A DNA stretch of 64,000 nt, taken from sequence record PP496439.1; one strand, given 5' to 3'. The translations under genes were made by a program, and so were the position numbers. The notes beneath the pieces are model-generated. The model saw only the letters and a program-made list of their open reading frames with translations, was not told the origin of the DNA and did not search any database. Every line of letters begins with the position of its first letter. Position 1 is the first letter of the stretch. Shown here piece by piece: positions 8,798-47,525 of the stretch.

Positions 8798-8807
8798 AAT
8801 TACATAC
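8798..8807 (-). promoter_or_regulatory. Candidate late-promoter element GTATGTAATT
   Basis: Exact 10-mer also at 18917-18926; both precede minus-strand virion operons. Confidence 0.45.
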
Positions 8808-8824
8808 ATACCGGAAAATCAACG

Positions 8825-8842
8825 GTAAATGATGGGTATAAC
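8825..8842 (+). promoter_or_regulatory. Phage promoter motif GTAAAT-N6-TATAAC
   Basis: Intergenic, upstream of the RuvC-like gene; the motif recurs in about ten intergenic gaps. Confidence 0.55.
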
Positions 8843-8908
8843 GTCATATTCCGAATTAGCATCTTTTGTCCGGTTTCCTTACTACTCAAAAATCTAGGAT
8901 CGGTCACT

Positions 8909-26662: not shown

Positions 26663-27486
26663 TAGTCTGTCCTCTTGATGTTGCCGGGTAGGGTGTAGGA
26701 CCACGGCTTGACATAATCTGCCGGGCGGGTGTAACCGATCAGGTCGGTACCTTCGTACGGGCCGTGCTTCCACGGGTCGGTAATCTCTGCGCGTTCGAAC
26801 CCGATGGACTCGTACAGCTTGATCGCACCTTCGTTGTCCGGATCCACGTTGAGATGGTGTGGCAGTCCTTGGGTCAGTTCCCAAGACAGCAGGAAGTCCA
26901 GCATGCCGGTGGCGACACCGCGACGGCGGTAGTCTGGATCAACACTGATCTCCTTGACGAAGCACGCGTCCACCTTCTCGCTGTCTTCGTCTTCCTTGAA
27001 CATCACAACGTCCATCAGCCCAACTACCTTGTTGTGCGCGGTAACTGACACCCTTATCTCTTCCTGATCCGGTATATCCCCGCTCCAGCCATTCCATCGA
27101 GCCATGGTCACCGTGTACAGATGGTGTTGCCCGTCGTGCTTGGGACTGTGCACCTGATGCAGTGCCCGTGCATTCTTCAACTCCATCTTGGCGCCGGGCT
27201 TGATGACCGGGAATTCCAGATGCTTAATTTCCTTTTCAAGCATGATACCAATCTCGGAGTCTTTCGCTTTCTTGTCTTTGATGGTGGCTCGGTACACTGT
27301 GTCTGTGTCCGTGTTGTAAACACCCACCTTATCCGTCATCACCGTAATAGACGGCACAGCGGACCAGATGTACTCTTTGCAATGAGCTTTATCTGGGAAT
27401 GCGAAGCCAACGGACTTTCCGTCTACAATGACCAGCCACGGGCAATGGCCGGGATGCGGAAACCGAAGGATCTTTTGTGTGGGCAT
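26662..27486 (-). CDS. GNAT acetyltransferase with an unknown N-terminal domain
   Basis: EISVDPDYRRRGVATGML (motif A) and LNVDPDNEGAIKLYESIGF (motif B). Confidence 0.85.
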   Translation of the reverse strand: MPTQKILRFPHPGHCPWLVIVDGKSVGFAFPDKAHCKEYIWSAVPSITVMTDKVGVYNTDTDTVYRATIKDKKAKDSEIGIMLEKEIKHLEFPVIKPGAKMELKNARALHQVHSPKHDGQHHLYTVTMARWNGWSGDIPDQEEIRVSVTAHNKVVGLMDVVMFKEDEDSEKVDACFVKEISVDPDYRRRGVATGMLDFLLSWELTQGLPHHLNVDPDNEGAIKLYESIGFERAEITDPWKHGPYEGTDLIGYTRPADYVKPWSYTLPGNIKRTD

Positions 27487-34685: not shown

Positions 34686-35446
34686 ACAATCAAAACAGAA
34701 CTCGTATCGCTGTGCTTGTCGGCGGCGGTCTGGACTCACATGCGTACATGGTATTGAAAGCCGACCAGCCTCAGACAGACTTCATTCATGTGGACTACGG
34801 CCAGCGGGTTGCAGTAGCCGAGAGAAACGCCGTGTTGCAAATGGCTGAGAAGCTGGGCATTGCCCGCAGCCGGGTGTACACGCTGATCTGCAACAAGAAG
34901 AATCACATGCGCAAGGTCAATGACGGTGTGGGTGTGTTGTTTGGCACCGGCCCGGTCGAGATGGACAATGCGTTTGTTAAGGGACGTAACCTGTTCCTGA
35001 TTCAGAAGGCCATCGAGCTGGGCTACGGTCACGTGCACTTGACGCTGACCCAAGAGCGTGGCCGGATGTTCCCCGATGCCGATCTGGCATTCGTCCAGCT
35101 GGTTGACAACCTGATGCACCGCAGTTATGACGTGAGGGTATCCGCCCCCTACATCATGGAAGACAAGCATCGGGTGATGTTCAAGGCGTATCGGCATTGC
35201 CCCGAGTTCCTCGATATGTCTTTCACGTGCTGGGTAGGTCCTTATGTGGAATGTGGCACGTGCCCGCACTGCGTCAAGAAGGAAAAGATTCGAGCCGAGA
35301 TGATCGTTGAGAAGATTGAATACGATCTCAGCAAGGATGAACGTGAGGCGCAGTGGGAGCAAGTCAAGGCAGGCTACGGCGACGCGTTGAAGCCCGCTGA
35401 GACCATCAACATGAACATTCAGGTTGTTGACGGAGGACTGAAATGA
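34682..35446 (+). CDS. queC: QueC-like PP-loop ATPase (copy 1)
   Basis: VLVGGGLDS, VDYGQR, FVKGRN, FPDA, TCW...CGTCPHC. Confidence 0.8.
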   Translation: MNNQNRTRIAVLVGGGLDSHAYMVLKADQPQTDFIHVDYGQRVAVAERNAVLQMAEKLGIARSRVYTLICNKKNHMRKVNDGVGVLFGTGPVEMDNAFVKGRNLFLIQKAIELGYGHVHLTLTQERGRMFPDADLAFVQLVDNLMHRSYDVRVSAPYIMEDKHRVMFKAYRHCPEFLDMSFTCWVGPYVECGTCPHCVKKEKIRAEMIVEKIEYDLSKDEREAQWEQVKAGYGDALKPAETINMNIQVVDGGLK

Positions 35447-36153
35447 ACAAGTTCTTAGGTTGGTTCAAGCGTCTGCTGGATAAGAAGCACAAGTCGATCA
35501 CGATGACGTTGACCGACGCCGAAGGTAAGTTGGTCACCATCCACATACCGCAAGGTGCGGGTGTCGAATACACGCTCTCGAAGTCGGGCACCCACTTGAA
35601 CGTCTCAGTTAAAGACGACGTCTTCATGTTGCGCACGAATGGCGCTGGAGTCGGTGGCAGTGGAAGTTCCAAGCCCGGTCTCAACGGTGGCCCCGGCCAT
35701 ACACCTATCCCCCGGTCCCCAAGCTTCACGGGCGCTGGTACGCCGAACTACGGTCACGCAGGCGACCCGCCTGTTGGTGCTCAAGCTTCGTTCCCTATCG
35801 GCGCCCGAGCAACTGTTTCTGGTGGTGGGCGCGTTGGTGGCCTGTCAGGTGGAAGCGCAAACGGCACAATGGCTGGTGGTGGAGATGGCTTCGTTCCCTC
35901 TCCAATCCGTAGCTCTGATCGAGCTTACCTGATTAGAGGTTTGTATTACGTCATCACGACGAAGAAGATAACGGGAGAGCAATACCCGATCCATGAGCTT
36001 CTGCATTGGGGTAAGAAGTCAATCGAACTCATGGGCAAGTTCTCCACCGTCCGAGACGCTATCGACGAACTCAAATTGAAGACGGGTATCCCATTCGAAG
36101 ACCTGACGGACTATCAGGTTGATTCCCTTCCCAAACGACTGTGCAAGCCTTGA
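35443..36153 (+). CDS. Hypothetical protein with Gly/Pro-rich central region
   Basis: ATGA coupling; ~85-aa G/P/S-rich tract. Confidence 0.55.
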   Translation: MNKFLGWFKRLLDKKHKSITMTLTDAEGKLVTIHIPQGAGVEYTLSKSGTHLNVSVKDDVFMLRTNGAGVGGSGSSKPGLNGGPGHTPIPRSPSFTGAGTPNYGHAGDPPVGAQASFPIGARATVSGGGRVGGLSGGSANGTMAGGGDGFVPSPIRSSDRAYLIRGLYYVITTKKITGEQYPIHELLHWGKKSIELMGKFSTVRDAIDELKLKTGIPFEDLTDYQVDSLPKRLCKP

Positions 36154-36191: not shown

Positions 36192-37010
36192 ATGACCACT
36201 GCGCCCCCAAAGATTATCGTTGCATTCAGCGCCGGTACAGATTCAACTACAGCGGCCTACTACTATCGCAAGCTCGGCTATCAGGTAACGCTGGCCGTGT
36301 TCGATGACGGCGCATGCAACGATCCACTTGGCCCTCTGTACGATCCGAACAAGCCGAAGGACTTGACCAACTTCTCGGATGAGTTCTACGATTACGTACG
36401 GATTCACCAAGAGCACACGGAAGGCCATCTTCAGTTCGACTTCGTGGAGATTCGTTATCCGCAACTCGCATTGCTGGAAGCCAACAAGACAGCCAAGCCC
36501 GGTCGGGACAATGCAGCAGCAGCAGAGGCTGACGGCTTGGGCTTCTGGGTCGGCTTCAAGGGCCTGATGGCAATGTTGCTGATGAGCCACGGCGCCGCCA
36601 ATGGTTACGAGGCAGTAGTCTTCGGCCACATGCCGTACAACAACCATTACGAAGATGAGCTGCCCCAGAACTTCGAGCTGCTGCGTCAGTACATGGTTAC
36701 GGCCTATGGCAGCCGAGTGGAAATTCCTCAGATCTACCACCCATTCTATCGACCGAATTTCGATACCAAGGAAAAGGTTATTGAGCTGGCTCAGGCAATC
36801 GGCGTGCCCTTGCGAGATACCTATTCGTGCCGCCGAGGTGAAGTAGAAACCCGAGGTATCCTCCTGCCACTTCTGCGTGGCGGTAACTCCAACTACGTGA
36901 GCCCCACCTACCGTTGGAAGCATTGTGGTACGTGTGAGAACTGTGTCGAACGCAAGCGAGCCTTCGCGGCGCTGGGCATGAAAGATCCTGCCCCTTATAT
37001 GGAACATTGA
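36192..37010 (+). CDS. queC: QueC-like PP-loop ATPase (copy 2, divergent)
   Basis: VAFSAGTDST, TYSC...HCGTCENCVERKRAF. Confidence 0.75.
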   Translation: MTTAPPKIIVAFSAGTDSTTAAYYYRKLGYQVTLAVFDDGACNDPLGPLYDPNKPKDLTNFSDEFYDYVRIHQEHTEGHLQFDFVEIRYPQLALLEANKTAKPGRDNAAAAEADGLGFWVGFKGLMAMLLMSHGAANGYEAVVFGHMPYNNHYEDELPQNFELLRQYMVTAYGSRVEIPQIYHPFYRPNFDTKEKVIELAQAIGVPLRDTYSCRRGEVETRGILLPLLRGGNSNYVSPTYRWKHCGTCENCVERKRAFAALGMKDPAPYMEH

Positions 37011-37011
37011 T

Positions 37012-38028
37012 ATGGCCCTTTCAATCTGGCCGCTGACCGAAGGTGAACTCGGTCAGGGCCTCGTCAACGAACTGAATCGTACCAGCAAGGCGCTGGTGAA
37101 CCGGAGTATGTGGTCTTTGCCATTGCTCCGGCGTTTGTTTTATCGGCGCACCGAGATTGGTGTCCCGGAGCTACTCCACGTCTGTACCAGCATTCATCGG
37201 GGCAAGACTTACTTCTGCCTGTTGGTGAACTTCCGAGATGTGGTGATGGGCAACCCCGAGCAATACGGATGGGACCTAGCTGGCCGGTGGTTGTTCTACG
37301 ATGTGGATCTGCTGGATACCCCGGAGTTTAAACAGGTAAACGCGGCTATTCGTAAGGTGGCTACGGTCAACACGGTTACCTACGGTCAAGCATTCGTTCC
37401 GGATGAAGGTGGTATGGGGGAGGAGCACTGGATCAAGAAACTGAAAGGTAACTACCGCCCCCACATCTTCGGCGAAAAGTCAAAACAGGTTATCGTCAGT
37501 CAGACCTGCGGACACGCGGCTACTCACGTTCTGACCGAGGCAGTGATGTCATTCGGTATCCAGCGCGCTGAGAGATTTCTCGCGGAAGGTCAGTCGGATG
37601 TCATGCCGGAGTTGTATGACCTACCCATGCAGCTAGCCGGTCTAGGCTCGATCCCTGGAACCCGGATTGGCACCGTGTCGCTCACCTGCCGGGATACCCG
37701 TGCGCTGATCGGTACCCTGTCGTTCTACGTTGTGGCAGGCTTGGGTCACAGTGATATCTTGTATATGCACGAGATGCTGATTGATCCGGATCCGAAGTGG
37801 AAGCCTCTATCGGTGGCCGTCAACTTGCACATTCAGGCAATCATGTATGTGCGCTATCTAAACAGCCGATCTGATCGGGCTTCGGACTTGGTTATCAACC
37901 TCGGATTCAACTTGGACGAGAAGTACAACACATACAAAGAGGTGTTCCGTCCGAACAAGTCCGAAATGGAAATCTATACCGGCATGCACACCGAGCCCGG
38001 CGTCCCACTGTCCTGTTTCAAGGGGTAA
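37012..38028 (+). CDS. Putative GNAT/FemABX-like transferase
   Basis: C-terminal INLGFNLDEKYNTYKEVF resembles the C-terminus of its paralogs. Confidence 0.45.
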   Translation: MALSIWPLTEGELGQGLVNELNRTSKALVNRSMWSLPLLRRLFYRRTEIGVPELLHVCTSIHRGKTYFCLLVNFRDVVMGNPEQYGWDLAGRWLFYDVDLLDTPEFKQVNAAIRKVATVNTVTYGQAFVPDEGGMGEEHWIKKLKGNYRPHIFGEKSKQVIVSQTCGHAATHVLTEAVMSFGIQRAERFLAEGQSDVMPELYDLPMQLAGLGSIPGTRIGTVSLTCRDTRALIGTLSFYVVAGLGHSDILYMHEMLIDPDPKWKPLSVAVNLHIQAIMYVRYLNSRSDRASDLVINLGFNLDEKYNTYKEVFRPNKSEMEIYTGMHTEPGVPLSCFKG

Positions 38029-38031
38029 GAC

Positions 38032-39033
38032 ATGTACACTCCGTATTCCCAAAACAGTCTGATGCAATCGATCCCGTTGGATGACCAAGGTACATTCGCC
38101 CATCCGCCGTATACGATGGAAGGAGAGTTAACCGACGTGTGGACGAACCCCAACCTATATGGGTTCGTCAGCCTGTTGAACGGCCAGAGCAATAGCCGGG
38201 CCTATCGAGACTGGATGACCACCCACAATCTTCCAGCACTGTTCCTCGGTCCGCATCATGAAGACAACTTCTGGTTTGAATTCAGCACTGGTCTCTATTC
38301 CAACTGCACGCTGGATTACAACGAGATCAACGTCCAAGGCAACCTGCAGGACTTCCTTGGGAGATTGACGTCATCTCGCCGTCGCTCCGTGCTCAAGGCA
38401 AAGGAAACGGATACAATGATCCACAAGGCAGGCTCGGTAGCCAACTTCAACCTGTATCATCCGGTGGAGGGTAGGCTGTATAGTCTTACCGCGATTCACG
38501 AACGCCGGGTGATGAAAGATATTTCAGAGTTTATCGAATCGAAACTTTGGAGTATGAAGCAGACGCCTACTGACCTCACGTACGGGGCATTCACCACTCT
38601 GATGGACTACATCCGGTTGAAGCAGCGAGAGGATACGCCACTCGGCCACCTACTGCGCGCCGTTCATCTATTGGTCATTCGAGACGAACGTTCAGGGTTT
38701 ATCGTGTCGGTACACCTGGTGGCGATCAACACGTTGAAAGATGATCGCCATAATCCTATCAAGACCTACTTGCACTCCTTTGCGCGCATCACTGTTCTCC
38801 CTGCACGTATCGCCCTACTCGCGTTGATCAAGGTGGTTCAAGAGTTAAACGTCACTAGTCAGTACGCGTCCCGTACACTGGCGAAGATTGACTATCTTGA
38901 CGTGAGCAACGTGGTGCTGTCCGAGCGAGAGCAGTACAAGTCGGACTTCTTCACCGGCAAATGCCAAGTGCGTGCGTGGGCATCCCCGGCGCTGCTGGAA
39001 CGACAGTTACCTTTCGTTACGCCGATCCCGTAA
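38032..39033 (+). CDS. Putative GNAT/FemABX-like transferase
   Basis: QDFLGRLTSSRRRSVLKA helix; C-terminal YLDVS...EQYKSDF. Confidence 0.5.
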   Translation: MYTPYSQNSLMQSIPLDDQGTFAHPPYTMEGELTDVWTNPNLYGFVSLLNGQSNSRAYRDWMTTHNLPALFLGPHHEDNFWFEFSTGLYSNCTLDYNEINVQGNLQDFLGRLTSSRRRSVLKAKETDTMIHKAGSVANFNLYHPVEGRLYSLTAIHERRVMKDISEFIESKLWSMKQTPTDLTYGAFTTLMDYIRLKQREDTPLGHLLRAVHLLVIRDERSGFIVSVHLVAINTLKDDRHNPIKTYLHSFARITVLPARIALLALIKVVQELNVTSQYASRTLAKIDYLDVSNVVLSEREQYKSDFFTGKCQVRAWASPALLERQLPFVTPIP

Positions 39034-39087
39034 CTCTGTAAATGATGGGAACAGCCCCACCATCACTTCATCTCTAGGGTAGTTCCC

Positions 39088-40140
39088 ATGCAAGACTTCG
39101 ATAAGATAATGATCGATAGTAGTTTGACATCCAATCTGGTGTACGCAGGGTTGGGTAACTTGATCACGCCCCGCGCACTTGACCTGCTGATCGAACATCA
39201 GGCTGCACTGGAAAACGTATACGCCAATCTGGAAACAGCGTATCAGATTACCCCACCCTTCCCCTGTGAAGCTGCATTCAATTACCCTGACAAAGATCCT
39301 GTGCTGGTCGCCGACTATCTGAATGCTACTCCCGCCATCCGTTGCGGAGAGCTGGCTGGATTCGAGGCAAAGCCCGGCAGTTACTACCATGCGCCCGCCG
39401 CTGGTATCTCCCCGGAACATCGCATCGACGTACGTGGTATGTCTTTGCGTGAGTTCGACCACTATCTGGTTGAGCGTAAGGAAGTATCCCGTATCACTAC
39501 CAATCTGGTGGCCGACAAGTTCCGCTGTGAGACGCATGTGTACAAAGTGGATGAAGATCATATCCTGATCCATGACGCCGAACGAGTTGGGATCAGCCAG
39601 ACGGACTTCCGCCGCATGTGGGCGCAGACCCGCCGCCGGGAAATCGCTGAAAACTATCTGCAGTACATGCCCATCGAAGACTCCGCCAAGGATGATCAGG
39701 TGGTGCGACTGATCAACGAAGACGTAGCACGGGTGTTAGCCCAGAACGTCGACTACGACCGCATGATTCCGCCCGAGCTGATCTTCGATGGTCAGGGCAA
39801 GCCGGTGCTGACCGTGCTGAAAGATTGCAACGCCAAGGTGTTGGGCATTGGTGTGTACGTCATCTACAAGTCAGCTGACCCAGAGCATGACAGCGAACTG
39901 CACTGGCGTGGCGCTTTCTACGATCACGAAGATCCTCGCGTAGCATCCATGGGCATTGAACACGCTCTGGTTGCCAGCGCACTGCACACAGCGTACGCCT
40001 GCAACGCGGTCCTCTATCTGACCAAGGCACCTAAGTCCGTGTGTGACGCATGGAAGACGGAAGTGCACCAAGGTTACGGGCTGGTCCGTAATGCGATGCC
40101 GGAACTGTCTGACACCCCTTACATTCTGGCTATCCAGTAA
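39088..40140 (+). CDS. Putative aminoacyl-transferase-like GNAT (FemABX/Arg-tRNA transferase-like)
   Basis: DFRRMWAQTRRREIAEN; AFYDHEDPRVASMG...VLYL resembles the FYD...SLG...YL pattern. Confidence 0.45.
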   Translation: MQDFDKIMIDSSLTSNLVYAGLGNLITPRALDLLIEHQAALENVYANLETAYQITPPFPCEAAFNYPDKDPVLVADYLNATPAIRCGELAGFEAKPGSYYHAPAAGISPEHRIDVRGMSLREFDHYLVERKEVSRITTNLVADKFRCETHVYKVDEDHILIHDAERVGISQTDFRRMWAQTRRREIAENYLQYMPIEDSAKDDQVVRLINEDVARVLAQNVDYDRMIPPELIFDGQGKPVLTVLKDCNAKVLGIGVYVIYKSADPEHDSELHWRGAFYDHEDPRVASMGIEHALVASALHTAYACNAVLYLTKAPKSVCDAWKTEVHQGYGLVRNAMPELSDTPYILAIQ

Positions 40141-40173
40141 ATAGCCGGTAACTCCATCCATTGAGGTACTTCC

Positions 40174-42258
40174 ATGAAATCCGTGAACCCCATCTTCAAA
40201 CACGTTCCCCAGTTCGACTGGCCTGTCATTCCCCGTGCGCAGTGGGAAGAGATCGTCAAGGGAAAAGAGCATGTGATGTTCGACTCCTTCTCGCAGCTCG
40301 CTCAAGTGTTGGCTATCCCGGTGAGCAGTTACCAGTTCTACTTCGAAGATGGGTCCACGTTGTTCGCCGGTCCCGAAGCAACCTTCACCGCCGCGCCGTA
40401 CCCGCTGTATCAGGACCTTGAATTCGTCCTGACCCCTGACGAGACGTTGGTGCCGGGTCTTGCACTGGATACCAAACCGTGGGGCCTGTACACCGACGAA
40501 TGGGTGGACAACTACGAAGGTGCGGACAAGGAAGACATCGGCAACAAGACCGGGTTCGAATTCATTCCGCTGTCGGACGCCTTGAAACTGGTGGTCCTCA
40601 ACACGGAGACCATGCAGCTCCAGTACACTGCAATCGAGAGCTTCACGTACGACGGCGTGACTTACGTATACCTGCTGGCCGATGGCGTGTGCTGGGTACT
40701 GGCGGGCAAGTCCGGTGGTCTGGTTGCCAGCGAGCATGACAAAGGTGCTGCGTTCATCATGGTGTCCCATCCCGAGTTCGCCGGGTGCAGCGTAGACAAC
40801 ATGTACCCAAGTGAGTTCGGTGAAGCGGAAGCGACGTTCTACGTTCAAGACGAGGAACACAATTACCTGGACGCGGCTAACCGCATCTTCGAGGAAGCCA
40901 AGGACGTAGGCGCTGGCACTTTCCTGACCATTGAGACCGGGGATGGACTGCCGACGGCACTGGCCTACAACCTGCGTTACAGTGACGTGGCCCACGTTAA
41001 CCTGCCGATGCACAACATCCACCAGTTCACGTCTCTTCACGTACGACTGGGCGAGACGCCTAACTTCTCCGAGGCCCCGGAAGCGTGCCGCATGAAAGAG
41101 GTGATGGAGTACCTGGCGGACCCCGAGTCCCCGGTAGACCATTACTGGTCTGCCATCATGGTACTGGAGAAGAACTTCCCCGGTTTCGCCGACGCCCTGA
41201 AAGACTCCAGTGTCCCAACCCGTGACATCGTGCACTCCAAACAGGCGTTCAGCTTGGAGATCGATCGCCAGTTCGGCAAGGAAGTGGCAAGCAAGATCGG
41301 CCTGAACACTGGCGTATTCGCCCAAGTGAAAGACCGTGATGAGTGGCTGACCCGTCAAGACGATTTTCCTACCGACAAGGTGGCCGTCAAGTACAACACC
41401 AAACACTTCATCGGCATCTTCGACAAGGACGAGGTATCGAATTCCATCAACATGTGGCTGGCCGGTCAACCCGGAGAGTCGCTGATGATCGAAGAGTACT
41501 TCGGTGAGGGCAATCAGGAATTCAACCTGTGCTATGTGATCAACGAAGAGTTCGTGCAGCCGACGCTGTTCCTGTGCGAAGTCAACAAGATCCTCGGTAA
41601 TGACACCGGCGGCAAAGGTGGCAACACGCTGGCCTGCCATGATGCTCGTATTAACAAGTACCCTGAGTTCTTTGAGCCGGTCAATGCTGCGCTTGCTAAC
41701 CTGCATGAGCACGTGGAAGGTGTGAAGGGCTGGGTTGACCTGAGCTTCATGGTCCGCGACGGCATCCCTTACTTCACAGAGTGGTGCATTCGAATTGGCT
41801 GCTCCAACAACGCCACCATCGTGCGCCAGATGGAGACCCCGCTCGACGTTCTGCTGACCAACGTGGTTAACAAGGTGCATACCGAGCTGTCTTGGAAGCA
41901 CTCCATGTCTGTCAGCGTGGACATCTACAGCATGCCGCTGTCCGCAGGCAATGATGCCAACATGCAGTTCACCGAGTCGCTGACCACGCCGGTCGAGATG
42001 GTGTCCCCGCTCAATCTGGAACTGGCGGCGGAGAGTTTCTTCGACCCGATTGATTCGGCCTGGAACGCGGTGTACGACGGCTACATTGTCGAGGCGTACA
42101 ACCGATATGGCACCGTCTCGGGGTATTCCACCAACTGGAACTTCGCCTGCAATGCGGCGTACAATCACTTGAAAGATCAGTCGGTGTTGTACGGGGCATA
42201 CCGCGAAGCGCCTGCCCACCACGACCCACTGACTCTGTTCCCTTTCCTCAAGGCGTAA
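40174..42258 (+). CDS. ATP-grasp ligase, PurD-like C-terminal half, with a large unknown N-terminus
   Basis: VAVKYN, LMIEEYFGEGNQEF, GNDTGGKGG, MVRDGIPYFTEWCIRIG. Confidence 0.7.
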   Translation: MKSVNPIFKHVPQFDWPVIPRAQWEEIVKGKEHVMFDSFSQLAQVLAIPVSSYQFYFEDGSTLFAGPEATFTAAPYPLYQDLEFVLTPDETLVPGLALDTKPWGLYTDEWVDNYEGADKEDIGNKTGFEFIPLSDALKLVVLNTETMQLQYTAIESFTYDGVTYVYLLADGVCWVLAGKSGGLVASEHDKGAAFIMVSHPEFAGCSVDNMYPSEFGEAEATFYVQDEEHNYLDAANRIFEEAKDVGAGTFLTIETGDGLPTALAYNLRYSDVAHVNLPMHNIHQFTSLHVRLGETPNFSEAPEACRMKEVMEYLADPESPVDHYWSAIMVLEKNFPGFADALKDSSVPTRDIVHSKQAFSLEIDRQFGKEVASKIGLNTGVFAQVKDRDEWLTRQDDFPTDKVAVKYNTKHFIGIFDKDEVSNSINMWLAGQPGESLMIEEYFGEGNQEFNLCYVINEEFVQPTLFLCEVNKILGNDTGGKGGNTLACHDARINKYPEFFEPVNAALANLHEHVEGVKGWVDLSFMVRDGIPYFTEWCIRIGCSNNATIVRQMETPLDVLLTNVVNKVHTELSWKHSMSVSVDIYSMPLSAGNDANMQFTESLTTPVEMVSPLNLELAAESFFDPIDSAWNAVYDGYIVEAYNRYGTVSGYSTNWNFACNAAYNHLKDQSVLYGAYREAPAHHDPLTLFPFLKA

Positions 42259-42261
42259 TCC

Positions 42262-43425
42262 ATGAGCACTCCATTCCAAGAGTTCACCCTAGAAGGGTGG
42301 ATTCGCTACATGAGAGATGAAAGCATCATCTGGCGCGCGTACGCTGATGGTCATCCGGATAAGGTCGAGTTCAGCCCGGAGTGGCGTGACGAGATGTATC
42401 GGTTGATGGTGCAGTTCAAAGATCTGCTGCCGATGTCGTTTTCCAATCCGGTGTACGGCTTCACTGAAGGTTGGCTGGAAGGGCTCGGACTCCAGCCCTT
42501 TTATGGCGATGATCCGTTCAATCCGATGGTGCAACCGCTTAGCCACCCTCTGGTGCATGTGGGGCTTCCGTTTACTCTGAGCGAGCTGACGGCGGGCGTA
42601 TGGGACTGTCAGTCCCTGAGCGCTCACCTGGAGCGTCCGCTGCTGGTCGATACATTCGAACCGATCCCAGTGCCATCTATTAGCCTGGACGCTTACAAAG
42701 CCGTCCTGACCGTACGGGACCGGGAAGAGATCGTGATGAGTGCGGGAACCCCGGTGAACTACTTCCTCTGGTTGAATAGTCCGATCACCGAACTCAAAGA
42801 CGACTTCGACGTTTATCTGGCCAGCCTGACCAAGAAGCGCCGCTACAAAGTGAAGCAGGCACTGGCGACAGTGGGCACCGAAGAGAACCCGGCTATCAGC
42901 GTCAGTACTGGATCTCGTTTCGGCGAAGGGTTGTTGTCCGATCAGGTGAACAGCATCCTCGCGACTTTCGAAGATCCGGTGGACATCGAGTGCATGCTTC
43001 TTCAGCTGCTGTTCGGGGTGGCAACCTGCAATACCCATCCGCATCTTGTCGATCTGGTTTGTGCAGACCAGCAGTTGGGGATCTTCATCAAGCGCAACGG
43101 CCACACGATGAATTTCCTCTACAACCGTGACCCGGACAACCGCGCTGACTCAGGCATCAACCTGCTGACCCAGTACGTGCGCCATCTGCACATGAACCGC
43201 CCGGAAGGTGTGATGTACGTGGACCCGACATGTCGATATCGGCCTGACGAGGACAGTATGAACACCTACAAGCGGGTGATCACCAACGAGAACCGGTATC
43301 ACCCAATGCCGTTCGTCTCGGCTGACCCTGCGCATATTGAAGGTGTGATTACCCCGGCGTTCATTGCAGGTCATTGGCAGATGTCGGCGTCCAATGGCCC
43401 GGCCAATCCTGAGATGATGGAGTAA
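42262..43425 (+). CDS. Putative GNAT/FemABX-like transferase (Acetyltransf_6-like)
   Basis: DDFDVYLASLTKKRRYKVKQAL; C-terminal YVDPT...NTYKRVI. Confidence 0.6.
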   Translation: MSTPFQEFTLEGWIRYMRDESIIWRAYADGHPDKVEFSPEWRDEMYRLMVQFKDLLPMSFSNPVYGFTEGWLEGLGLQPFYGDDPFNPMVQPLSHPLVHVGLPFTLSELTAGVWDCQSLSAHLERPLLVDTFEPIPVPSISLDAYKAVLTVRDREEIVMSAGTPVNYFLWLNSPITELKDDFDVYLASLTKKRRYKVKQALATVGTEENPAISVSTGSRFGEGLLSDQVNSILATFEDPVDIECMLLQLLFGVATCNTHPHLVDLVCADQQLGIFIKRNGHTMNFLYNRDPDNRADSGINLLTQYVRHLHMNRPEGVMYVDPTCRYRPDEDSMNTYKRVITNENRYHPMPFVSADPAHIEGVITPAFIAGHWQMSASNGPANPEMME

Positions 43426-43427: not shown

Positions 43428-44375
43428 ATGGCAAAGCACAAGGTCAAAAGGTTGGAAATCAACCACATCTACGACTTCTACCCGTTGTATCAGGTGATGT
43501 ACGGGCGTGGCATGGAGACCAAAGCGTTCGAGGTCTCCAAGTTCGCCAAGATGGTGCTGGACTTCGAAGCATCAACCAGTACTCGCCGGAAGTGGGACGT
43601 GCTGGAACCTTTCAGCGGTATCAGCGAGCATGAACACTTCTTCGCTGCGACCGGCCTGAACATCGAGCATTACACCGGCATGGACATCGTGGTTCCAGAT
43701 GGAGCCAAAAACGTCATTCAAGGCGACATCATCACCGACACCCTTCCGTTTCACGTCAACGCGGTGTTCGCCTTCTACTACAGCTTGCAGAATGTACGGG
43801 ACGCCAAGACTGGCATGCACACGCGGGAAAAGCTGGTGGAGTTCTTCGACAACATCCTCGGCCATCTGCAAGTCAATGCGAACAAGAGCCGTATGCCCGC
43901 AGTGTTCGCTTTCCACCTTGACCAGCCTGAAGACCCTAATTACTATCTGACGTCCCGTGCCGACGTTGGAGGTGAACAGTCATGGACCGCACCCGCGTGT
44001 GGTCTGCTGGGGCAGTGGGTCAAGTGCAAACCGACTGACACTCTGGAAGTGAAGTGCAATCTGGACACCTGGTACAACCGTGTGCAGTGCACCGCGTACG
44101 ATCAGGCGGAGGATATCCAGATTCTGGTAAATGGGCGAGTAGTGGCGACCGTTGAGATCGAACAGCCGTTCACTCATCGGGTCTGGACCGAGCATGAGGT
44201 GATCGACATCCTGCGGGGTCTGGACTACAATCTGCACTTCCACATGTACAACGGCACCATCTCCAATTACGACTTCTTGATGACCCGTTTGGAAGACAAG
44301 CCCGTTCCCGGCTATGAAGAGGCTAATACTAATCAGATGACAACTGATATGCTGGTTGTCGTTAATCCGAGGTAA
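43428..44375 (+). CDS. Class I SAM-dependent methyltransferase-like protein
   Basis: VLEPFSG, YTGMDI, IQGDIIT. Confidence 0.65.
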   Translation: MAKHKVKRLEINHIYDFYPLYQVMYGRGMETKAFEVSKFAKMVLDFEASTSTRRKWDVLEPFSGISEHEHFFAATGLNIEHYTGMDIVVPDGAKNVIQGDIITDTLPFHVNAVFAFYYSLQNVRDAKTGMHTREKLVEFFDNILGHLQVNANKSRMPAVFAFHLDQPEDPNYYLTSRADVGGEQSWTAPACGLLGQWVKCKPTDTLEVKCNLDTWYNRVQCTAYDQAEDIQILVNGRVVATVEIEQPFTHRVWTEHEVIDILRGLDYNLHFHMYNGTISNYDFLMTRLEDKPVPGYEEANTNQMTTDMLVVVNPR

Positions 44376-44377: not shown

Positions 44378-45295
44378 ATGGCTAAGCCCAAGATCCCTAC
44401 ACGAACCATCCCCACGTTGTACCAAGACTGGGGGTTGTACAGCGCCATCTGCGAACTGCCGCAGGAGACGATGCTGATGATGTCGCGCTTCGTGGCAGAC
44501 CGGACCATCGAACATGCCGAGCGCCATGACCTGGAAAGTGTGGCGATCATGGAGCCCTTTAGCGGGCCGATCCCGTATTACGAGCCAGACATCCGAAGCT
44601 TCCTGACTCGCGCCCGTGTTGACCTGGATACGTACGATCATGTCGAGTACCTTGATCATGGTGGATTGTCGGAAGACAACAATATCATCATCGGTGACAT
44701 CACCACCATCGACCTGAAACAGAAATACGACGTCATCTACGGCAGTTACGGCAGCTTGGCCTGCCTGCTGCTGGATCACACGCACAACAAAGCTTACGAG
44801 AAGTCGCACGCGGCGCTGGTCAACATTCGCGAGCACCTGAAACCCAACGGCATCTTCGTCCTGAACGCCAACGGATCCAGCGAAAGCCTGCTGAATAACC
44901 TGTTGAACTCCGATGAGCCGGATCAAGAGATTCGCGTCCGTCCGGGATCGCAGTTGGGCAAGGCGTTCCGAATCAAACCAGACAGTAACGCGCTGCTTCG
45001 TTTCTCCTACAACGTGGAGTACGACCGACGCACCACCTGCACCATGTGCCACTACAGCGATATGGTGCTGTCTGTAAATGGAGTTGACATCCAGCGCTGG
45101 GAGGTGGAATCCCCGACGTATCTTGCGCCGCTGGATGAACCCGAACTAATTCGAATGGCAGGTATGGCTGGTTTCAATCTGGAAAACACTGAGTTCTACG
45201 GATTGGACACCACCGGTTATCCTGCCTTCTTCAAAATGGATACGGTCTGCGACGGGTCATGGTCACCCGCCGAGTTCGTAGTCTTTCGCACCTAA
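44378..45295 (+). CDS. Class I SAM-dependent methyltransferase
   Basis: IMEPFSG, IIGDITTIDLKQKYDVI, IREHLKPNGIFV. Confidence 0.8.
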   Translation: MAKPKIPTRTIPTLYQDWGLYSAICELPQETMLMMSRFVADRTIEHAERHDLESVAIMEPFSGPIPYYEPDIRSFLTRARVDLDTYDHVEYLDHGGLSEDNNIIIGDITTIDLKQKYDVIYGSYGSLACLLLDHTHNKAYEKSHAALVNIREHLKPNGIFVLNANGSSESLLNNLLNSDEPDQEIRVRPGSQLGKAFRIKPDSNALLRFSYNVEYDRRTTCTMCHYSDMVLSVNGVDIQRWEVESPTYLAPLDEPELIRMAGMAGFNLENTEFYGLDTTGYPAFFKMDTVCDGSWSPAEFVVFRT

Positions 45296-45305
45296 CGAGG
45301 TTCCT

Positions 45306-46541
45306 ATGAGCGTTATCATCCCCACCGTAGCGATGGAGAGTGGTCAGCCAGACATGATCATTCAAGGCTGTTCCACGGGTCGCCTCTCTATGGCCGAGCC
45401 TAACGAGAGCGCCAAACCTAAGTCTTCCAAGAAGCTGTACGAACGTGAAGACCTGATGGCGTACGACAGCGAGTCGGAGCACTGGCAGAAGCAGTTGGCC
45501 CGCCGCTACGCTCACCACGGTGAGATGGTCGGTGTGTTGAACAACGTCGAGGTGGTGCCGGAAGCCACCTATCAGAACTTCGACATGAAGATCACCCCGT
45601 ACACCGCGCAGTTGATGGACCAGAACGACCCCAACTGCCCGATCCGTTTGCAGTACATGCCGACCAATAAAGAGCTGGAGTCGATTCAGCGCGAAGAGAC
45701 CATGCACAACGAGCTGGGCGAGGAAGAGGACACCATCCCCGGTACCTCGGTCGTGCATCGCTACCCGCGTCGTGTCTTGTTCCTGACCACTACCCAATGC
45801 GCCAGCTTCTGCCGTTACTGCACCCGTGCACGCATAGTCTCCCACGGCGGCGAAGCGGCGATCACCAAGAAGCACCTTGACGCCAGCATCGACTACATCG
45901 CCGGGAACAAGGACATCGAAGACGTGCTGCTGTCCGGCGGTGACCCGTTCATCCTCCCAGACAACAAGCTCGACGAGATCCTCGGTCGTATCCGTGCTGA
46001 AGCACCTCACGTTCGCTTCCTGCGTATTGGTAGCCGACTGCCGGTCCAGATGCCGACTCGTATCACTCCAGAGCTGTGCGAGATTCTGGAACGCCACAAT
46101 GTCAACATGGTCAACATCCATGTGAACCATCCGAAAGAAGTAACCCCTCTGCTGGCCTCCCGGATGAAGATGTTGCGCAAAGCTGGCGTGATGATCGGCA
46201 ATCAGGCCGTCATGCTGAAAGGCGTGAACGACTCCATCCAGGTGATGACCGAGCTGTGCTTGCGTATGGTCGAGATGGGCGTCCGTCCGTACTACGTCTA
46301 CTCCAACGATCCGGTGGCCCAGGCCGCACACTTCACCGTGTCGCTGAAAGAGATGCTGAATATCAACGAGGGTATGCGTGGCTTCCTGTCTGGCCCGGCT
46401 ATGCCAACCTTCGTGGTAGACGGCGTGGGTGGCTTGGGCAAGATGCCGGTGCAGAAAGAGTACGTCGGCTTCGATAAGAACGGCGGTATCTTCGCCCAGA
46501 ACTTCGAAGGGAAAACGGCCCGCATGCCCCATCTGGAATAA
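45306..46541 (+). CDS. kamA: Lysine 2,3-aminomutase family (radical SAM, PLP)
   Basis: ITPY...CPIRLQ, HRYPRRVL, CASFCRYCTR, LLSGGDP, HVNHPKE, NQAVMLKGVND, YYVYSND, FVVDGVGGLGKMP. Confidence 0.93.
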   Translation: MSVIIPTVAMESGQPDMIIQGCSTGRLSMAEPNESAKPKSSKKLYEREDLMAYDSESEHWQKQLARRYAHHGEMVGVLNNVEVVPEATYQNFDMKITPYTAQLMDQNDPNCPIRLQYMPTNKELESIQREETMHNELGEEEDTIPGTSVVHRYPRRVLFLTTTQCASFCRYCTRARIVSHGGEAAITKKHLDASIDYIAGNKDIEDVLLSGGDPFILPDNKLDEILGRIRAEAPHVRFLRIGSRLPVQMPTRITPELCEILERHNVNMVNIHVNHPKEVTPLLASRMKMLRKAGVMIGNQAVMLKGVNDSIQVMTELCLRMVEMGVRPYYVYSNDPVAQAAHFTVSLKEMLNINEGMRGFLSGPAMPTFVVDGVGGLGKMPVQKEYVGFDKNGGIFAQNFEGKTARMPHLE

Positions 46542-46692
46542 GCGTTCCCAGACACTCCCTAGTTCCATTGTACAAGCTTCAAATGCCCCATTTGCGCTAG
46601 GTCCTGTAAATGGGGTTGCTTATCAGCGTTGCAATGTGTTACGCTGGATTGGACCCATATTATTCCGATAACCGAACCACCGAGGTATCACC

Positions 46693-47124
46693 ATGAGCTT
46701 CTCCGTAACCGTAGCTGCACAGACCATCGCTGCCCCCGAGTCGCTGGGTAGCCCGAAAGGCATCAGCGTCCTCGAAGCCAACGAAGGCTTTGCTGTCATC
46801 GAATTCCAACGTCCTCGCGCCTCGAAGCGTGACCAGATTGCCGTCCCTCGCGTCCAGATCCTTTCCCTGAGCCACGGCAGCGCCGACGGCGACAGCGGTT
46901 ACCTGATCGCTCAAGGCATGGCCGGTGTGGCCGACGAATTCGAAGCCGCAAGCTTCACCATCGAAGGCAACGTTGCCACGTTCGTGACCGCTGAAGGCGC
47001 CACTATCGAAACCGACGCACGTCTGACCCGTATCCTCGCTTACGGCGTGGAAGAGGGCGAAAACAGCCTGCTGGGTAAGCCGGAAAAGAAAGTAAAACCG
47101 AAAGCAAGCACCAAGAAGAAGTAA
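46693..47124 (+). CDS. Hypothetical protein, likely highly expressed, with Lys-rich tail
   Basis: Own GTAAAT motif (46606), GAGG RBS, own terminator, biased codons. Confidence 0.75.
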   Translation: MSFSVTVAAQTIAAPESLGSPKGISVLEANEGFAVIEFQRPRASKRDQIAVPRVQILSLSHGSADGDSGYLIAQGMAGVADEFEAASFTIEGNVATFVTAEGATIETDARLTRILAYGVEEGENSLLGKPEKKVKPKASTKKK

Positions 47125-47153
47125 TCAACACGGCCCGCGCCGGTTGAACTAAG

Positions 47154-47185
47154 AAAAAGCCCCTTCCGTTTGGTTGGGGCTTTTT
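47154..47185 (+). terminator. Rho-independent terminator
   Basis: AAAAAGCCCC...GGGGCTTTTT. Confidence 0.85.
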
Positions 47186-47204
47186 CGTTATACCGAGGTG
47201 TCCC

Positions 47205-47525
47205 ATGGCTAAAGACAGATTCCTGATCTACTCCAAAAACTGCTTAGGGTGTAAACACCTCGTTGATGGAGCCAAGAAGACCTACACTGCGTGTCACTAC
47301 AGTGAAGGCAACGAACGCTGCCCCGCGCAGTACGTCCAGATTATTACGGGTGTGGATATCCATGCCTTGGCTACTGAGTTGGCAGACGCCATCAGGGCTA
47401 ACAATTCCAAGAAGTACGATCGGGTGAATGCCAAGATCGGTAAATTGGACACTGTGATTGCCAGCAGCGTGAAGCTGGCCGCAGACAACCTAATAGCAGG
47501 GGCCGGTGATGGCGAAGGTAAATAG
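47205..47525 (+). CDS. Small Cys/His (zinc-binding?) protein
   Basis: CLGC...CH...C; GAGG RBS; overlaps the topoisomerase B start. Confidence 0.65.
   Translation: MAKDRFLIYSKNCLGCKHLVDGAKKTYTACHYSEGNERCPAQYVQIITGVDIHALATELADAIRANNSKKYDRVNAKIGKLDTVIASSVKLAADNLIAGAGDGEGK

What the first reader, a model, noticed from the sequence alone, without database searches (positions are those of the whole stretch)
45306..46541. Phage lysine 2,3-aminomutase with substrate residues pointing to a basic amino acid
Seen: CxxxCxxC followed by TR, YYVYSND, and FVVDGVGGLGK with the PLP lysine. Established: in clostridial KamA, Arg134, Asp293 and Asp330 bind lysine, and glutamate 2,3-aminomutases replace the two Asp residues. 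By eye both Asp equivalents are kept here, which favours beta-lysine or beta-arginine. No EpmA/EF-P partner is in the window, so the product probably feeds the adjacent ligases. Alternative: N-acetyl-beta-lysine osmolyte synthesis (AblA/AblB type).
Basis: partly seen in the sequence, partly recalled or inferred. Interest (0 to 1): 0.72.

Follow-up and report, generated by a model that had tools for sequence, protein, structure and literature searches.

The report
Phage lysine aminomutase feeding ligase module
A Pseudomonas putida jumbo phage encodes an apparently intact lysine 2,3-aminomutase (a beta-lysine-making enzyme) inside a gene module of ligases and QueC-like enzymes that recurs in several phage lineages and probably builds a still-unknown amino-acid decoration, most likely on 7-deazaguanine in the phage DNA.

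Summary
ORF 45306-46541 (+), 411 aa, is a KamA-family radical SAM/PLP enzyme. It has CxxxCxxC (C165/C169/C172), and the equivalents of clostridial KamA Arg134, Asp293, Asp330 and Lys337 are all kept.

The window is Pseudomonas phage vB_PpuM-Amme-1, where the gene is annotated "hypothetical". The enzyme fails every substrate-specific NCBIfam cut-off. So does its 58-61% identical bacterial sister clade, which in 11 of 11 genomes heads the curated lysine-fermentation operon (kdd, kamB/D/E, kal, kce). L-lysine to beta-lysine is therefore well supported.

Neither phage genome checked has EpmA, EF-P or lysine-catabolic partners. Instead, KamA sits in a module found in at least six phage or phage-like lineages: a PurD-type ATP-grasp ligase, a GNAT/FemAB-like protein and an unidentified A198-type protein. 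In most lineages there are also two intact QueC-like enzymes, and in the Vibrio phages an ArcS2 (ArcS is a lysine-to-preQ0 transferase).

Amme-1 also carries FolE, QueD-like, QueE-like and a TGT/DpdA-like gene. The best reading is that beta-lysine is a building block for a hypermodified 7-deazaguanine in DNA. That step is inferred, not shown. The module is not described in the literature searched.

The parts
45306..46541 (+). KamA-family radical SAM/PLP L-lysine 2,3-aminomutase (Amme1_00200, annotated 'hypothetical protein'), 411 aa
   Evidence: motifs, KamA-family HMM above cut-off, E = 7.5e-79 to 2A5H, all cluster, substrate and PLP residues kept; 58-66% identical to bacterial enzymes, of which the operon clade is lysine-fermentation KamA.
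40174..42258 (+). 694-aa protein (A196). The C-terminal half (~354-590) is a PurD-type ATP-grasp amidoligase. The N-terminal ~350 aa are unassigned.
   Evidence: NCBIfam purD 3.7e-7. Profile against PDB GAR synthetases 1.5e-6. Same phage distribution as the close KamA homologues. Long or short homologues sit next to KamA or A197-like genes in L012, L013, L036, L038, L039 and L041. The AlphaFold model failed.
42262..43425 (+). 387-aa GNAT-superfamily (Acetyltransf_6/FemAB-like) acyl- or aminoacyl-transferase candidate (A197)
   Evidence: Atlas lead to PF13480/FemAB clusters. Among 48 family members the only Pfam hits are GNAT families. Present in every module locus, directly abutting KamA in L037, L039 and L042. 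No direct Pfam or PDB hit for the Amme-1 protein itself.
43428..44375 (+). 315-aa protein (A198), member of a recurrent module family of unknown function
   Evidence: Family found in Amme-1 (x2), L012, L036, L037, L038, L039 and L041. The motif layout resembles class I methyltransferases, but this was not confirmed.
44378..45295 (+). 305-aa paralogue of A198 (A199)
   Evidence: Clusters with A198. Weak Methyltransf_31/12 hits, E 0.04-0.09.
34682..35446 (+). QueC-like PP-loop ATPase, 'GGGLDS' type (A190)
   Evidence: Pfam QueC 6.9e-19 full length. NCBIfam QueC 61.8 bits, below the 150.3 cut-off. PP-loop and four Zn cysteines kept.
36192..37010 (+). Second, more divergent QueC-like PP-loop ATPase, 'SAGTDS' type (A192)
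   Evidence: Pfam QueC 2.8e-12. PP-loop and four Zn cysteines kept. This paralogue type recurs in GR7B, GR11A, L036 and L038.
35443..36153 (+). 236-aa orphan between the two QueC-like genes (A191)
   Evidence: No hit in Pfam, PHROGs, NCBIfam or the Atlas. Included by position only.
37012..40140 (+). Three orphan genes A193 (37012-38028), A194 (38032-39033) and A195 (39088-40140)
   Evidence: A194 and A195 have orthologues in the same order upstream of the ATP-grasp gene in metagenomic contig L013. No family assignment. A194 shares only a short motif with A197 (hhalign E = 0.009).
33207..34685 (+). 492-aa LigA-type OB/HhH protein heading the gene string (A189)
   Evidence: Atlas lead to NAD-ligase OB/HhH clusters. 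Its Vibrio orthologue hits DNA_ligase_OB and HHH_2. Membership in the module is uncertain.
46693..47525 (+). Two small conserved genes after KamA (A201 46693-47124, A202 47205-47525)
   Evidence: Orthologues lie in the same position in GR7B and GR11A. No family assignment. Membership uncertain.

Best explanation
The gene encodes a working KamA-type enzyme. A [4Fe-4S] cluster on C165/C169/C172 cleaves SAM to a 5'-deoxyadenosyl radical. L-lysine, held as an aldimine on the PLP bound at K379, with its carboxylate on R174 and its epsilon-ammonium on D335/D372, has its amino group moved from C2 to C3, giving beta-lysine. This step is well supported by sequence and by the function of the nearest bacterial clade.

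The phage does not degrade the beta-lysine or put it on EF-P. It hands it to the co-inherited enzymes encoded beside it: a PurD-type ATP-grasp amidoligase (an amino-acid carboxylate plus an amine gives an amide), a GNAT/FemAB-like transferase and an A198-type protein. This step is inferred from recurring gene neighbourhood.

The most likely acceptor is a 7-deazaguanine. The module usually contains two intact QueC-family ATP-pyrophosphatases, and in the Vibrio phages an ArcS2, whose archaeal homologue adds lysine to preQ0. Amme-1 and GR7B both also carry FolE, QueD-like, QueE-like and a TGT/DpdA-like transglycosylase. The end product would be a beta-lysine-bearing, possibly further tailored, 7-deazaguanine in phage DNA that protects it from host nucleases. 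This step is inferred and no chemistry is shown.
For: Enzyme: (motifs, family HMM above cut-off, 2A5H alignment, residue table).

Substrate:
- 11 of 11 betaproteobacterial genomes with 58-61% identical homologues have AsnC-kamA-kdd-kamB-kamD-kamE-kal-kce as far as each contig extends.
- those partners pass the NCBIfam equivalog cut-offs. The operon's own KamA scores AblA 315 / Glu 297 / Arg 280, the same sub-threshold pattern as the phage enzyme (311 / 300 / 291).
- phage KamAs are interleaved with this clade in quick trees.

Not catabolic and not EF-P.

Module:
- identical phage distribution of the close KamA homologues, the ATP-grasp and A197.
- synteny between Amme-1 and the Vibrio phages.
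- the same families sit around KamA in L012, L013, L037, L039, L041 and L042 with shuffled order, and without KamA in L036.

Ligase identity: PurD-type ATP-grasp; GNAT.

Deazaguanine link:
- two QueC-like genes with intact PP-loop and Zn site.
- DUF5591/ArcS 9.4e-12 and a true QueC in GR7B; TGT and PTPS in Amme-1.
- FolE, QueE-like and the counterparts in both phages.
- PMC11298593: ArcS transfers L-lysine to preQ0. PMC10516641: phage ArcS2 acts on dPreQ0 in DNA.
Against: - No enzymology and no analysis of the phage DNA exist.
- The acceptor is inferred only from neighbourhood. The QueC-like genes could simply be the phage's preQ0 synthases parked next to an unrelated pathway.
- L041 shows KamA, ATP-grasp, A197-like and A198-like genes with no QueC-like gene in the 7.4 kb assembled upstream. 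In L039 no FolE, QueE or TGT lies within 10 kb.
- Amme-1 has no recognisable ArcS2 or QueF.
- Most module proteins are orphans. The one structure model failed.
- KamA enzymes are oxygen-labile, and P. putida is an aerobe (own knowledge).
- The characterised arginine and glutamate 2,3-aminomutase sequences could not be fetched, so exclusion of arginine rests on HMM scores and on the sister clade's context.
Confidence: 0.5

Rival explanations
1. Beta-lysine is attached to a protein or peptide rather than to DNA. The ATP-grasp and FemAB/GNAT-like enzymes would act as peptide or protein amidoligases that modify a host or phage protein, or build a small beta-lysine-containing peptide. The QueC-like genes would merely be neighbours.
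For: ATP-grasp and GNAT/Fem-type enzymes are classic peptide-bond formers (own knowledge; Iyer et al. 2009, cited in PMC7824862). L041 has the KamA/ATP-grasp/A197/A198 set without a visible QueC-like gene. Known beta-lysine users include EF-P lysylation (EpmA/EpmB).
Against: No EpmA or EF-P in the phages. From my own knowledge, Pseudomonas EF-P is modified by rhamnosylation and not by beta-lysylation. The module sits among replication genes (helicase, LigA-like, topoisomerase II). It is adjacent to QueC-like genes in five of the loci whose assembled sequence extends far enough upstream to show them (Amme-1, GR7B, GR11A, L036, L038) and near one in L039.
Confidence: 0.17
2. AblA/AblB-like route. 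Beta-lysine is N-acetylated to a free small molecule (N-epsilon-acetyl-beta-lysine or similar) that changes host physiology during infection.
For: A 155-159-aa GNAT directly follows KamA in both Vibrio phages, and a 193-aa GNAT lies three genes downstream in L039. AblA is the best-scoring NCBIfam equivalog.
Against: The AblA score is far below cut-off (311 against 525), as it is for catabolic KamAs. No GNAT in the clusters matched any NCBIfam beta-lysine acetyltransferase model. Amme-1, L037, L041 and L042 have no small GNAT next to KamA. A two-enzyme osmolyte route does not explain the conserved ATP-grasp, A197 and A198 partners.
Confidence: 0.08
3. The enzyme does not act on free L-lysine but on a related basic substrate. 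Candidates are arginine or ornithine, or the free alpha-amino-acid end of a lysine already attached through its epsilon-nitrogen to preQ0 (a preQ0-Lys adduct made by ArcS2), converting it in place.
For: R174 and K379 bind only the alpha end. A positively charged amidinium could still face D335/D372 (inference). ArcS2 co-occurs in the Vibrio phages. The equivalog HMM scores for Lys, Glu and Arg enzymes are close together.
Against: 58-66% identity to enzymes that act on free lysine. KamA occurs without ArcS2 in Amme-1, L037, L039 and L041. From my own knowledge of 2A5H, the KamA active site is buried, which argues against a DNA-tethered substrate.
Confidence: 0.1
4. The module makes a diffusible 7-deazapurine/beta-lysine secondary metabolite (antibiotic-like nucleoside) rather than modifying the phage's own DNA.
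For: From my own knowledge, beta-amino acids made by KamA-family enzymes occur in streptothricin, viomycin and blasticidin S, and deazapurine antibiotics derive from preQ0. ATP-grasp, GNAT and tailoring enzymes resemble a small biosynthetic cluster.
Against: Both phages carry a TGT/DpdA-like DNA transglycosylase, and the cluster lies inside the replication gene block. No exporter or self-resistance gene was seen.
Confidence: 0.07

Closest known systems
Clostridium subterminale lysine 2,3-aminomutase KamA (PDB 2A5H)
   Same: Radical SAM CxxxCxxC, PLP lysine, Arg134, Asp293, Asp330, SGGD and the Tyr-rich YYxY motif are all conserved. E = 7.5e-79 over ~310 residues.
   Different: The zinc-site Cys268 is Ser310 here, and the C-terminal domain beyond about residue 365 of KamA is missing. 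The phage protein has a ~45-aa N-terminal extension. The gene context is not lysine fermentation.
Betaproteobacterial kamA of the lysine-fermentation operon (Dechloromonas, Paucibacter, Rubrivivax; named only 'KamA family radical SAM protein')
   Same: 58-61% identity, the same residue set, the same shortened C-terminus and the same sub-threshold NCBIfam score pattern. Phage enzymes are interleaved with it in quick trees.
   Different: The bacterial genes are followed by kdd, kamB/D/E, kal and kce. None of these is in the phage genomes.
EpmB (YjeK) of E. coli, EF-P beta-lysylation
   Same: Same family and reaction type. 31% identity.
   Different: The EpmB model scores 223 against a cut-off of 369. 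EpmB has Glu at the Asp330 position. There is no EpmA or EF-P partner.
AblA/AblB N-epsilon-acetyl-beta-lysine pathway
   Same: AblA is the top-scoring equivalog. A GNAT follows KamA in the Vibrio phages.
   Different: Score 311 against 525. No match to any NCBIfam beta-lysine acetyltransferase model. Extra conserved ligase partners are present.
Archaeosine pathway ArcS/RaSEA, and phage ArcS2 with DpdA
   Same: It links lysine to preQ0 (PMC11298593). The Vibrio phages' cluster starts with a DUF5591/ArcS2 protein next to QueC. Both phages have a TGT-like gene.
   Different: Amme-1 lacks ArcS2. The radical SAM enzyme here is a PLP aminomutase, not a RaSEA-type enzyme. ATP-grasp and GNAT-like partners are not part of the archaeosine pathway.
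Phage thymidine hypermodification pathways, in which amino acids are installed on 5-hmdU and then reshaped by radical SAM isomerases and PLP enzymes (Lee et al. 2021 NAR; own knowledge, not retrieved here)
   Same: The same logic of amino-acid-derived DNA base decoration in large phages, involving radical SAM and PLP chemistry.
   Different: Pyrimidine rather than deazapurine. No 5-hmdU kinase or amino-acid:DNA transferase homologues were identified here. In this module the radical SAM enzyme most likely acts on the free amino acid before attachment.

Membership tests
KamA family radical SAM proteins (TIGR00238) | Family HMM above the curated cut-off | tested here: met
   275.5 bits against 199.2
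KamA family radical SAM proteins (TIGR00238) | CxxxCxxC [4Fe-4S]/SAM motif | tested here: met
   C165, C169 and C172 align with C125, C129 and C132 of 2A5H
KamA family radical SAM proteins (TIGR00238) | PLP-binding lysine (Lys337 of KamA) | tested here: met
   K379 in GGLGK
Lysine 2,3-aminomutase (substrate class) | Arg134 (carboxylate) and Asp293/Asp330 (epsilon-ammonium) equivalents | tested here: met
   R174, D335 and D372, also kept in all phage and lysine-operon homologues. The roles of these residues come from established knowledge (Lepore et al. 2005).
Lysine 2,3-aminomutase (substrate class) | Catalytic conversion of L-lysine to beta-lysine | not testable with these tools
   Needs an anaerobic in vitro assay
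Clostridial/Bacillus-type KamA and AblA equivalog (TIGR03820) | Equivalog HMM cut-off | tested here: not met
   311.4 against 525.4. The lysine-operon KamA of Dechloromonas also fails (314.7), so the model does not cover this clade.
Clostridial/Bacillus-type KamA and AblA equivalog (TIGR03820) | Zinc site (Cys268 plus C-terminal Cys cluster) and C-terminal domain | tested here: not met
   Ser310 at the Cys268 position. The protein ends ~32 residues after the PLP lysine.
AblA/AblB pathway | Adjacent AblB-type beta-lysine N-acetyltransferase | tested here: not met
   No NCBIfam beta-lysine acetyltransferase hit for any cluster protein or for the Vibrio GNAT. Only a generic GNAT follows KamA in GR7B and GR11A.
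EpmB (TIGR03821) | Equivalog cut-off and an EpmA/EF-P partner | tested here: not met
   223 against 369.3. No EpmA or EF-P by tblastn in either phage genome.
Glutamate 2,3-aminomutase (TIGR04368) | Equivalog cut-off; replacement of both Asp residues | tested here: not met
   300 against 650. Both Asp are retained. The replacement rule comes from established knowledge (Ruzicka & Frey 2007) and was not re-checked on a sequence.
Arginine 2,3-aminomutase (TIGR04468, BlsG type) | Equivalog cut-off | tested here: not met
   290.6 against 600. No reference sequence was available for a residue comparison.
Phage 7-deazaguanine DNA modification system (FolE, QueD, QueE, QueC, DpdA) | All five gene families present in the genome | tested here: met
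   FolE Pfam 3.8e-39. QueE-like PHROG 2.3e-41. PTPS 9.7e-8 and TGT 4.6e-8, both above the gathering score. Two QueC-like genes. The QueC-like, QueD-like and TGT-like proteins all score below the NCBIfam equivalog cut-offs.
Phage 7-deazaguanine DNA modification system (FolE, QueD, QueE, QueC, DpdA) | Modified deazaguanine actually present in virion DNA | not testable with these tools
   Needs LC-MS/MS of digested phage DNA

The most novel reading that the evidence does not exclude
Beta-lysine made by the phage KamA is covalently joined to a 7-deazaguanine that ends up in the phage genome, by the PurD-type ATP-grasp ligase, the second QueC paralogue or (in the Vibrio phages) ArcS2. It may then be further acylated or methylated. 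This would be a new class of amino-acid-hypermodified purine in DNA. It would also be the first use of a beta-amino acid, and of a KamA-type aminomutase, in nucleic-acid modification.
Probability: 0.35. Interest if true: 0.85.

Novelty: new variant of a known kind. Interest (0 to 1): 0.66.

Why it matters
The enzyme itself is an ordinary-looking lysine 2,3-aminomutase, so its chemistry is predictable. What is new is where it sits. It is embedded in a recurrent, undescribed phage module of ligases and QueC-like enzymes, in genomes that also carry a deazaguanine-into-DNA toolkit.

All known phage 7-deazaguanines carry small groups (cyano, amido, amidino, aminomethyl, methyl, formyl, carboxy or none). 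An amino-acid adduct would extend that chemistry, and it would parallel the amino-acid-derived thymidine hypermodifications.

The hypothesis is directly testable. Amme-1 and eight relatives are cultured lytic phages of P. putida KT2440, a standard laboratory strain. If the hypothesis is wrong, the module still defines a new beta-lysine-consuming pathway in viruses. It also shows that a large bacterial clade of genuine lysine 2,3-aminomutases is currently named only 'KamA family radical SAM protein'.

Tried and rejected
- **Structure prediction:** the AlphaFold model of the 694-aa ATP-grasp protein from a 4-sequence alignment gave mean pLDDT 33 and was discarded. No fold searches were therefore possible.
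- **Profile searches against PDB:** A197, A198/A199 and A194 gave nothing usable.
- **Orphan proteins:** the Atlas search on A191 gave no lead. hhalign among A194, A195 and A197 was not significant.
- **A198/A199 as methyltransferases:** not confirmed.
- **ArcS2 in Amme-1:** no ArcS2/DUF5591 found by motif, phmmer or a small HMM.
- **Huge-phage homologues:** the KamA homologues in uncultured huge phages LR756500 and LR756501 have no detectable module-family homologue within 20 kb by tblastn and were set aside.
- **Viral-contig scans:** scans with the single KamA protein and with the A197 alignment A11 found nothing. Alignment A8 was too diverse to scan.
- **Closest bacterial homologues:** the Lysobacter and P0002 homologues are solo genes in uninformative contexts.
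- **Rejected functions:** lysine catabolism and EF-P modification by the phage were rejected.
- **Literature:** searches for the phage name, for aminomutase plus hypermodification, for Asp293/Asp330 and for deazaguanine plus ATP-grasp found nothing relevant. The CEPEST collection paper does not discuss the cluster.
- **Tree coverage:** a tree with characterised clostridial KamA, AblA, Eam and BlsG sequences could not be built because those sequences were not retrievable as references. NCBIfam equivalog models were used instead.
Full report
**1. What is at the coordinates**

The window is Pseudomonas phage vB_PpuM-Amme-1 (PP496439.1, 202 kb, a lytic myovirus of P. putida KT2440). Window position 45306 corresponds to record position 169306. 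ORF 45306-46541 (+) is Amme1_00200, deposited as 'hypothetical protein'.

- It translates to 411 aa and has a GAGG ribosome-binding site 5 nt upstream of the ATG.
- Pfam finds Radical_SAM, Fer4_12 and the LAM_C domain.
- NCBIfam places it in the KamA family above the curated cut-off (275.5 against 199.2 bits).
- The only solved relative is C. subterminale lysine 2,3-aminomutase, 2A5H, at E = 7.5e-79.
- A 445-aa antisense ORF over the same DNA is a mechanical shadow ORF.

**2. The residue argument**

In the HMMER alignment the 2A5H chain numbering reproduces the literature numbering of the cluster cysteines (125/129/132). This gives a direct mapping:

| 2A5H residue | Amme-1 residue |
|---|---|
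| Arg134 | R174 |
| Asp293 | D335 |
| Asp330 | D372 |
| Lys337 | K379 |

The roles of these residues (carboxylate, epsilon-ammonium, PLP) are established knowledge (Lepore et al. 2005). So is the statement that glutamate 2,3-aminomutases replace the two Asp (Ruzicka & Frey 2007). I could not retrieve either paper.

A MAFFT alignment shows the same residue set in the Vibrio phage homologues, in the bacterial relatives and in two huge-phage homologues. E. coli EpmB has Glu at the Asp330 position.

There are two differences from the clostridial enzyme. The zinc-site Cys268 is Ser here, and the C-terminal domain is absent. Both differences are shared by the whole clade described next.

**3. Which substrate**

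The protein is below every substrate-specific NCBIfam cut-off:

| Model | Score | Cut-off |
|---|---|---|
| AblA / lysine | 311 | 525 |
| Glutamate | 300 | 650 |
| Arginine | 291 | 600 |
| EpmB | 223 | 369 |

This looked like a sign of a new specificity, but it is not. The big-database search found that the phage enzyme is 59-66% identical to a large bacterial clade that NCBI names only 'KamA family radical SAM protein'.

- In Dechloromonas the gene heads an operon.
- In all 11 GTDB genomes recovered with 58-61% identical homologues, the order is AsnC regulator, kamA, kdd, kamB, kamD, kamE, kal, kce as far as each contig extends.
- The partners pass the curated equivalog cut-offs for L-erythro-3,5-diaminohexanoate dehydrogenase, lysine 5,6-aminomutase alpha, beta and reactivase, 3-aminobutyryl-CoA ammonia lyase and 3-keto-5-aminohexanoate cleavage enzyme.
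- That pathway starts from beta-lysine, so these kamA genes are genuine lysine 2,3-aminomutases.
- The operon's own KamA gives the same sub-threshold score pattern as the phage enzyme (315 / 297 / 280).

The failure to reach the cut-offs is therefore a gap in model coverage.

In quick trees (SH-aLRT only, long branches, EpmB as outgroup, no clostridial, AblA, Eam or BlsG references), the phage enzymes are interleaved with this clade. Amme-1 groups with the Vibrio phage enzymes and two metagenomic proteins (support 90). Two other module-embedded KamAs (L037, L039) are sister to the operon clade (98 and 100).

I conclude with fairly high confidence (about 0.85) that the enzyme converts L-lysine to beta-lysine. 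This is probably the 3S isomer used by the catabolic pathway, but that is an inference.

**4. What it is not for**

tblastn of E. coli EpmA and EF-P, and of the six Dechloromonas catabolic partners, against the complete Amme-1 genome and the fetched GR7B loci (nearly the whole genome) found nothing but noise. From my own knowledge, Pseudomonas EF-P is rhamnosylated on arginine by EarP rather than beta-lysylated, so a host EF-P target is also unlikely.

**5. The neighbourhood**

From 33.2 to 47.5 kb the window holds fourteen tightly packed + strand genes between a helicase and topoisomerase II. There are no promoter or terminator signals above chance.

Assignable genes:
- Two QueC-like PP-loop ATPases.
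- A 694-aa protein whose C-terminal half is a PurD-type ATP-grasp (NCBIfam 3.7e-7; PDB profile 1.5e-6 to GAR synthetases).
- A 387-aa protein (A197). The Atlas gives a lead to Acetyltransf_6/FemAB clusters. Its 48 relatives from an exhaustive profile search hit only GNAT families.
- A LigA-type OB/HhH protein at the head of the string.

The rest are orphans.

Vibrio phages GR7B and GR11A have a syntenic cluster: LigA-like, DUF5591, QueC, QueC-like, V116, A197-like, ATP-grasp, KamA (49-51% identity), GNAT, then the same two small genes and topoisomerase II. Among 50,697 phage records, the close KamA homologues, the ATP-grasp protein and A197 have exactly the same distribution: nine P. putida phages and two Vibrio phages.

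**6. The module recurs elsewhere**

Metagenomic and IMG/VR contigs extend this result. BLAST clustering defines the families.

| Locus | Gene order |
|---|---|
| L012, L013 | Repeat the Amme-1 order A194-A195-A196-A197-A198-A199 |
| L037 | A198-like, A197-like, KamA (4-bp overlap) |
| L039 (154-kb IMG/VR contig) | QueC-like, two unknowns, A197-like, KamA, ATP-grasp, A198-like, unknown, GNAT |
| L041 (18-kb phage-like contig with DnaB and helicases) | A197-like, two small ORFs, ATP-grasp, A197-like, A198-like, KamA |
| L042 | KamA then A197-like |
| L036 (167 kb) | QueC, QueC, X, A197-like, ATP-grasp, A198-like; no KamA within 10 kb |
| L038 (23 kb) | QueC, QueC, X, ATP-grasp, A197-like, A198-like; no KamA seen, but the contig ends soon after |

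The constant core is therefore the ATP-grasp ligase, the A197-type GNAT-like protein and the A198-type protein. KamA and the QueC-like pair are frequent, separable additions. Shuffled gene order with conserved membership across lineages is good evidence of a functional unit.

**7. The deazaguanine link**

All eleven QueC-like proteins keep the PP-loop and the four zinc cysteines of E. coli QueC. They fall into two conserved types. In the Vibrio phages, type 1 is a bona fide QueC (185 bits against a cut-off of 150).

The first gene of the Vibrio cluster matches archaeosine synthase ArcS (9.4e-12) through its DUF5591 core. It carries a slightly degenerate PC-x3-KPY motif. ArcS transfers L-lysine onto preQ0, even on the free nucleoside (PMC11298593). 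Phage ArcS2 acts on dPreQ0 in DNA (PMC10516641).

Outside the window, Amme-1 encodes:
- FolE (Pfam 3.8e-39) and a QueE-like radical SAM protein (PHROG 2.3e-41) next to the DNA polymerase.
- A PTPS/QueD-like protein.
- A TGT-domain protein that is 52% identical to GR7B's.

Both phages therefore have the toolkit to make a 7-deazaguanine and to put it into DNA.

No published phage deazaguanine carries an amino acid (PMC10516641, PMC6884629). No paper in the library links KamA or an ATP-grasp to this pathway.

**8. Model and limits**

- **Shown:** an intact KamA-family gene with lysine-type residues; its membership in a recurrent module; the presence of deazaguanine genes.
- **Inferred:** beta-lysine is ligated by the PurD-type ATP-grasp (which by analogy joins an amino-acid carboxylate to an amine), or by the second QueC paralogue or ArcS2, to a 7-deazaguanine. 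It is then tailored by the GNAT-like and A198-type proteins. The product resides in phage DNA.
- **Against:** L041 lacks a visible QueC-like gene. Amme-1 lacks ArcS2 and a recognisable QueF. Most partners are orphans, no structure models were obtained, and nothing is known about the phage's DNA.
- **Rivals:** protein or peptide modification, an acetyl-beta-lysine-type small molecule, an alternative substrate including preQ0-Lys, and a diffusible deazapurine metabolite. These are scored separately.

**9. Verdict**

The enzyme is a new member of a known family. Its recruitment into an undescribed phage ligase and QueC-like module is a new variant of known systems, with a realistic chance of marking a new kind of DNA hypermodification. 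It is directly testable in a cultured phage of a laboratory strain.

Noticed in passing
window 45231-46568 (-) and 39871-42279 (-): Very long antisense ORFs (445 and 802 aa) lie exactly over the KamA and ATP-grasp genes. They have no homology support and look like shadow ORFs of a GC-rich, codon-biased genome.
   Followed up: partly
L004:31781-33382 (-) (Amme-1 record 81781-83382, outside the window): The TGT/DpdA-like gene Amme1_00106 is deposited as 456 aa. The ORF runs to 533 aa from a GTG, and the Vibrio homologue aligns from its residue 11, so the annotated start is probably too far downstream.
   Followed up: partly
L003:18255-19457 (+) and L026:27226-28200 (-): The QueD-like (PTPS) proteins of both phages are unusually long (400 and 324 aa against ~120 aa for QueD). 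The PTPS domain covers only part of each protein, and the extra parts are unassigned.
   Followed up: no
window 33207-34685 (+): A LigA-type OB/HhH protein with no detectable adenylation domain heads the gene string in Amme-1 and in both Vibrio phages. The phage also has a full NAD-dependent ligase elsewhere. It could be a DNA-binding partner of the module or an unrelated replication protein.
   Followed up: partly
window 26662-27486 (-): A 274-aa GNAT acetyltransferase (Amme1_00177) whose GNAT domain occupies only the C-terminal half. It gave no match to any NCBIfam beta-lysine acetyltransferase model.
   Followed up: partly
L022 (Dechloromonas sp. ARDL1 chromosome), about 8373-10004: The kamA match starts only at query residue 106. 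The AsnC regulator lies ~1.6 kb upstream instead of ~0.2 kb as in the other ten genomes, which suggests an insertion or disruption of kamA in this strain.
   Followed up: no
L028:42571-46588 (Vibrio phage GR7B) and Amme-1 record 84136-85233: GR7B has an acyl carrier protein gene and two hypothetical genes directly upstream of its TGT-domain gene. One of them (GR7B_00172) has a homologue (Amme1_00108, annotated 'peptidase') near the Amme-1 TGT-like gene, so the transglycosylase may have conserved partners of its own.
   Followed up: no
L030 and L031 (uncultured huge phages LR756500 and LR756501): KamA-family genes with the full lysine-type residue set (33-35% identity to the Amme-1 enzyme) occur in 462-kb and 735-kb phage genomes. 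tblastn found no module-family homologue within 20 kb, and their role is unknown.
   Followed up: partly
L007 and L009 (Lysobacter niastensis and a metagenomic contig): The closest bacterial homologues of the phage enzyme (62-66% identity) are solo genes without the lysine-fermentation operon, next to metallo-beta-lactamase-fold and TetR genes. Their function is unclear.
   Followed up: no
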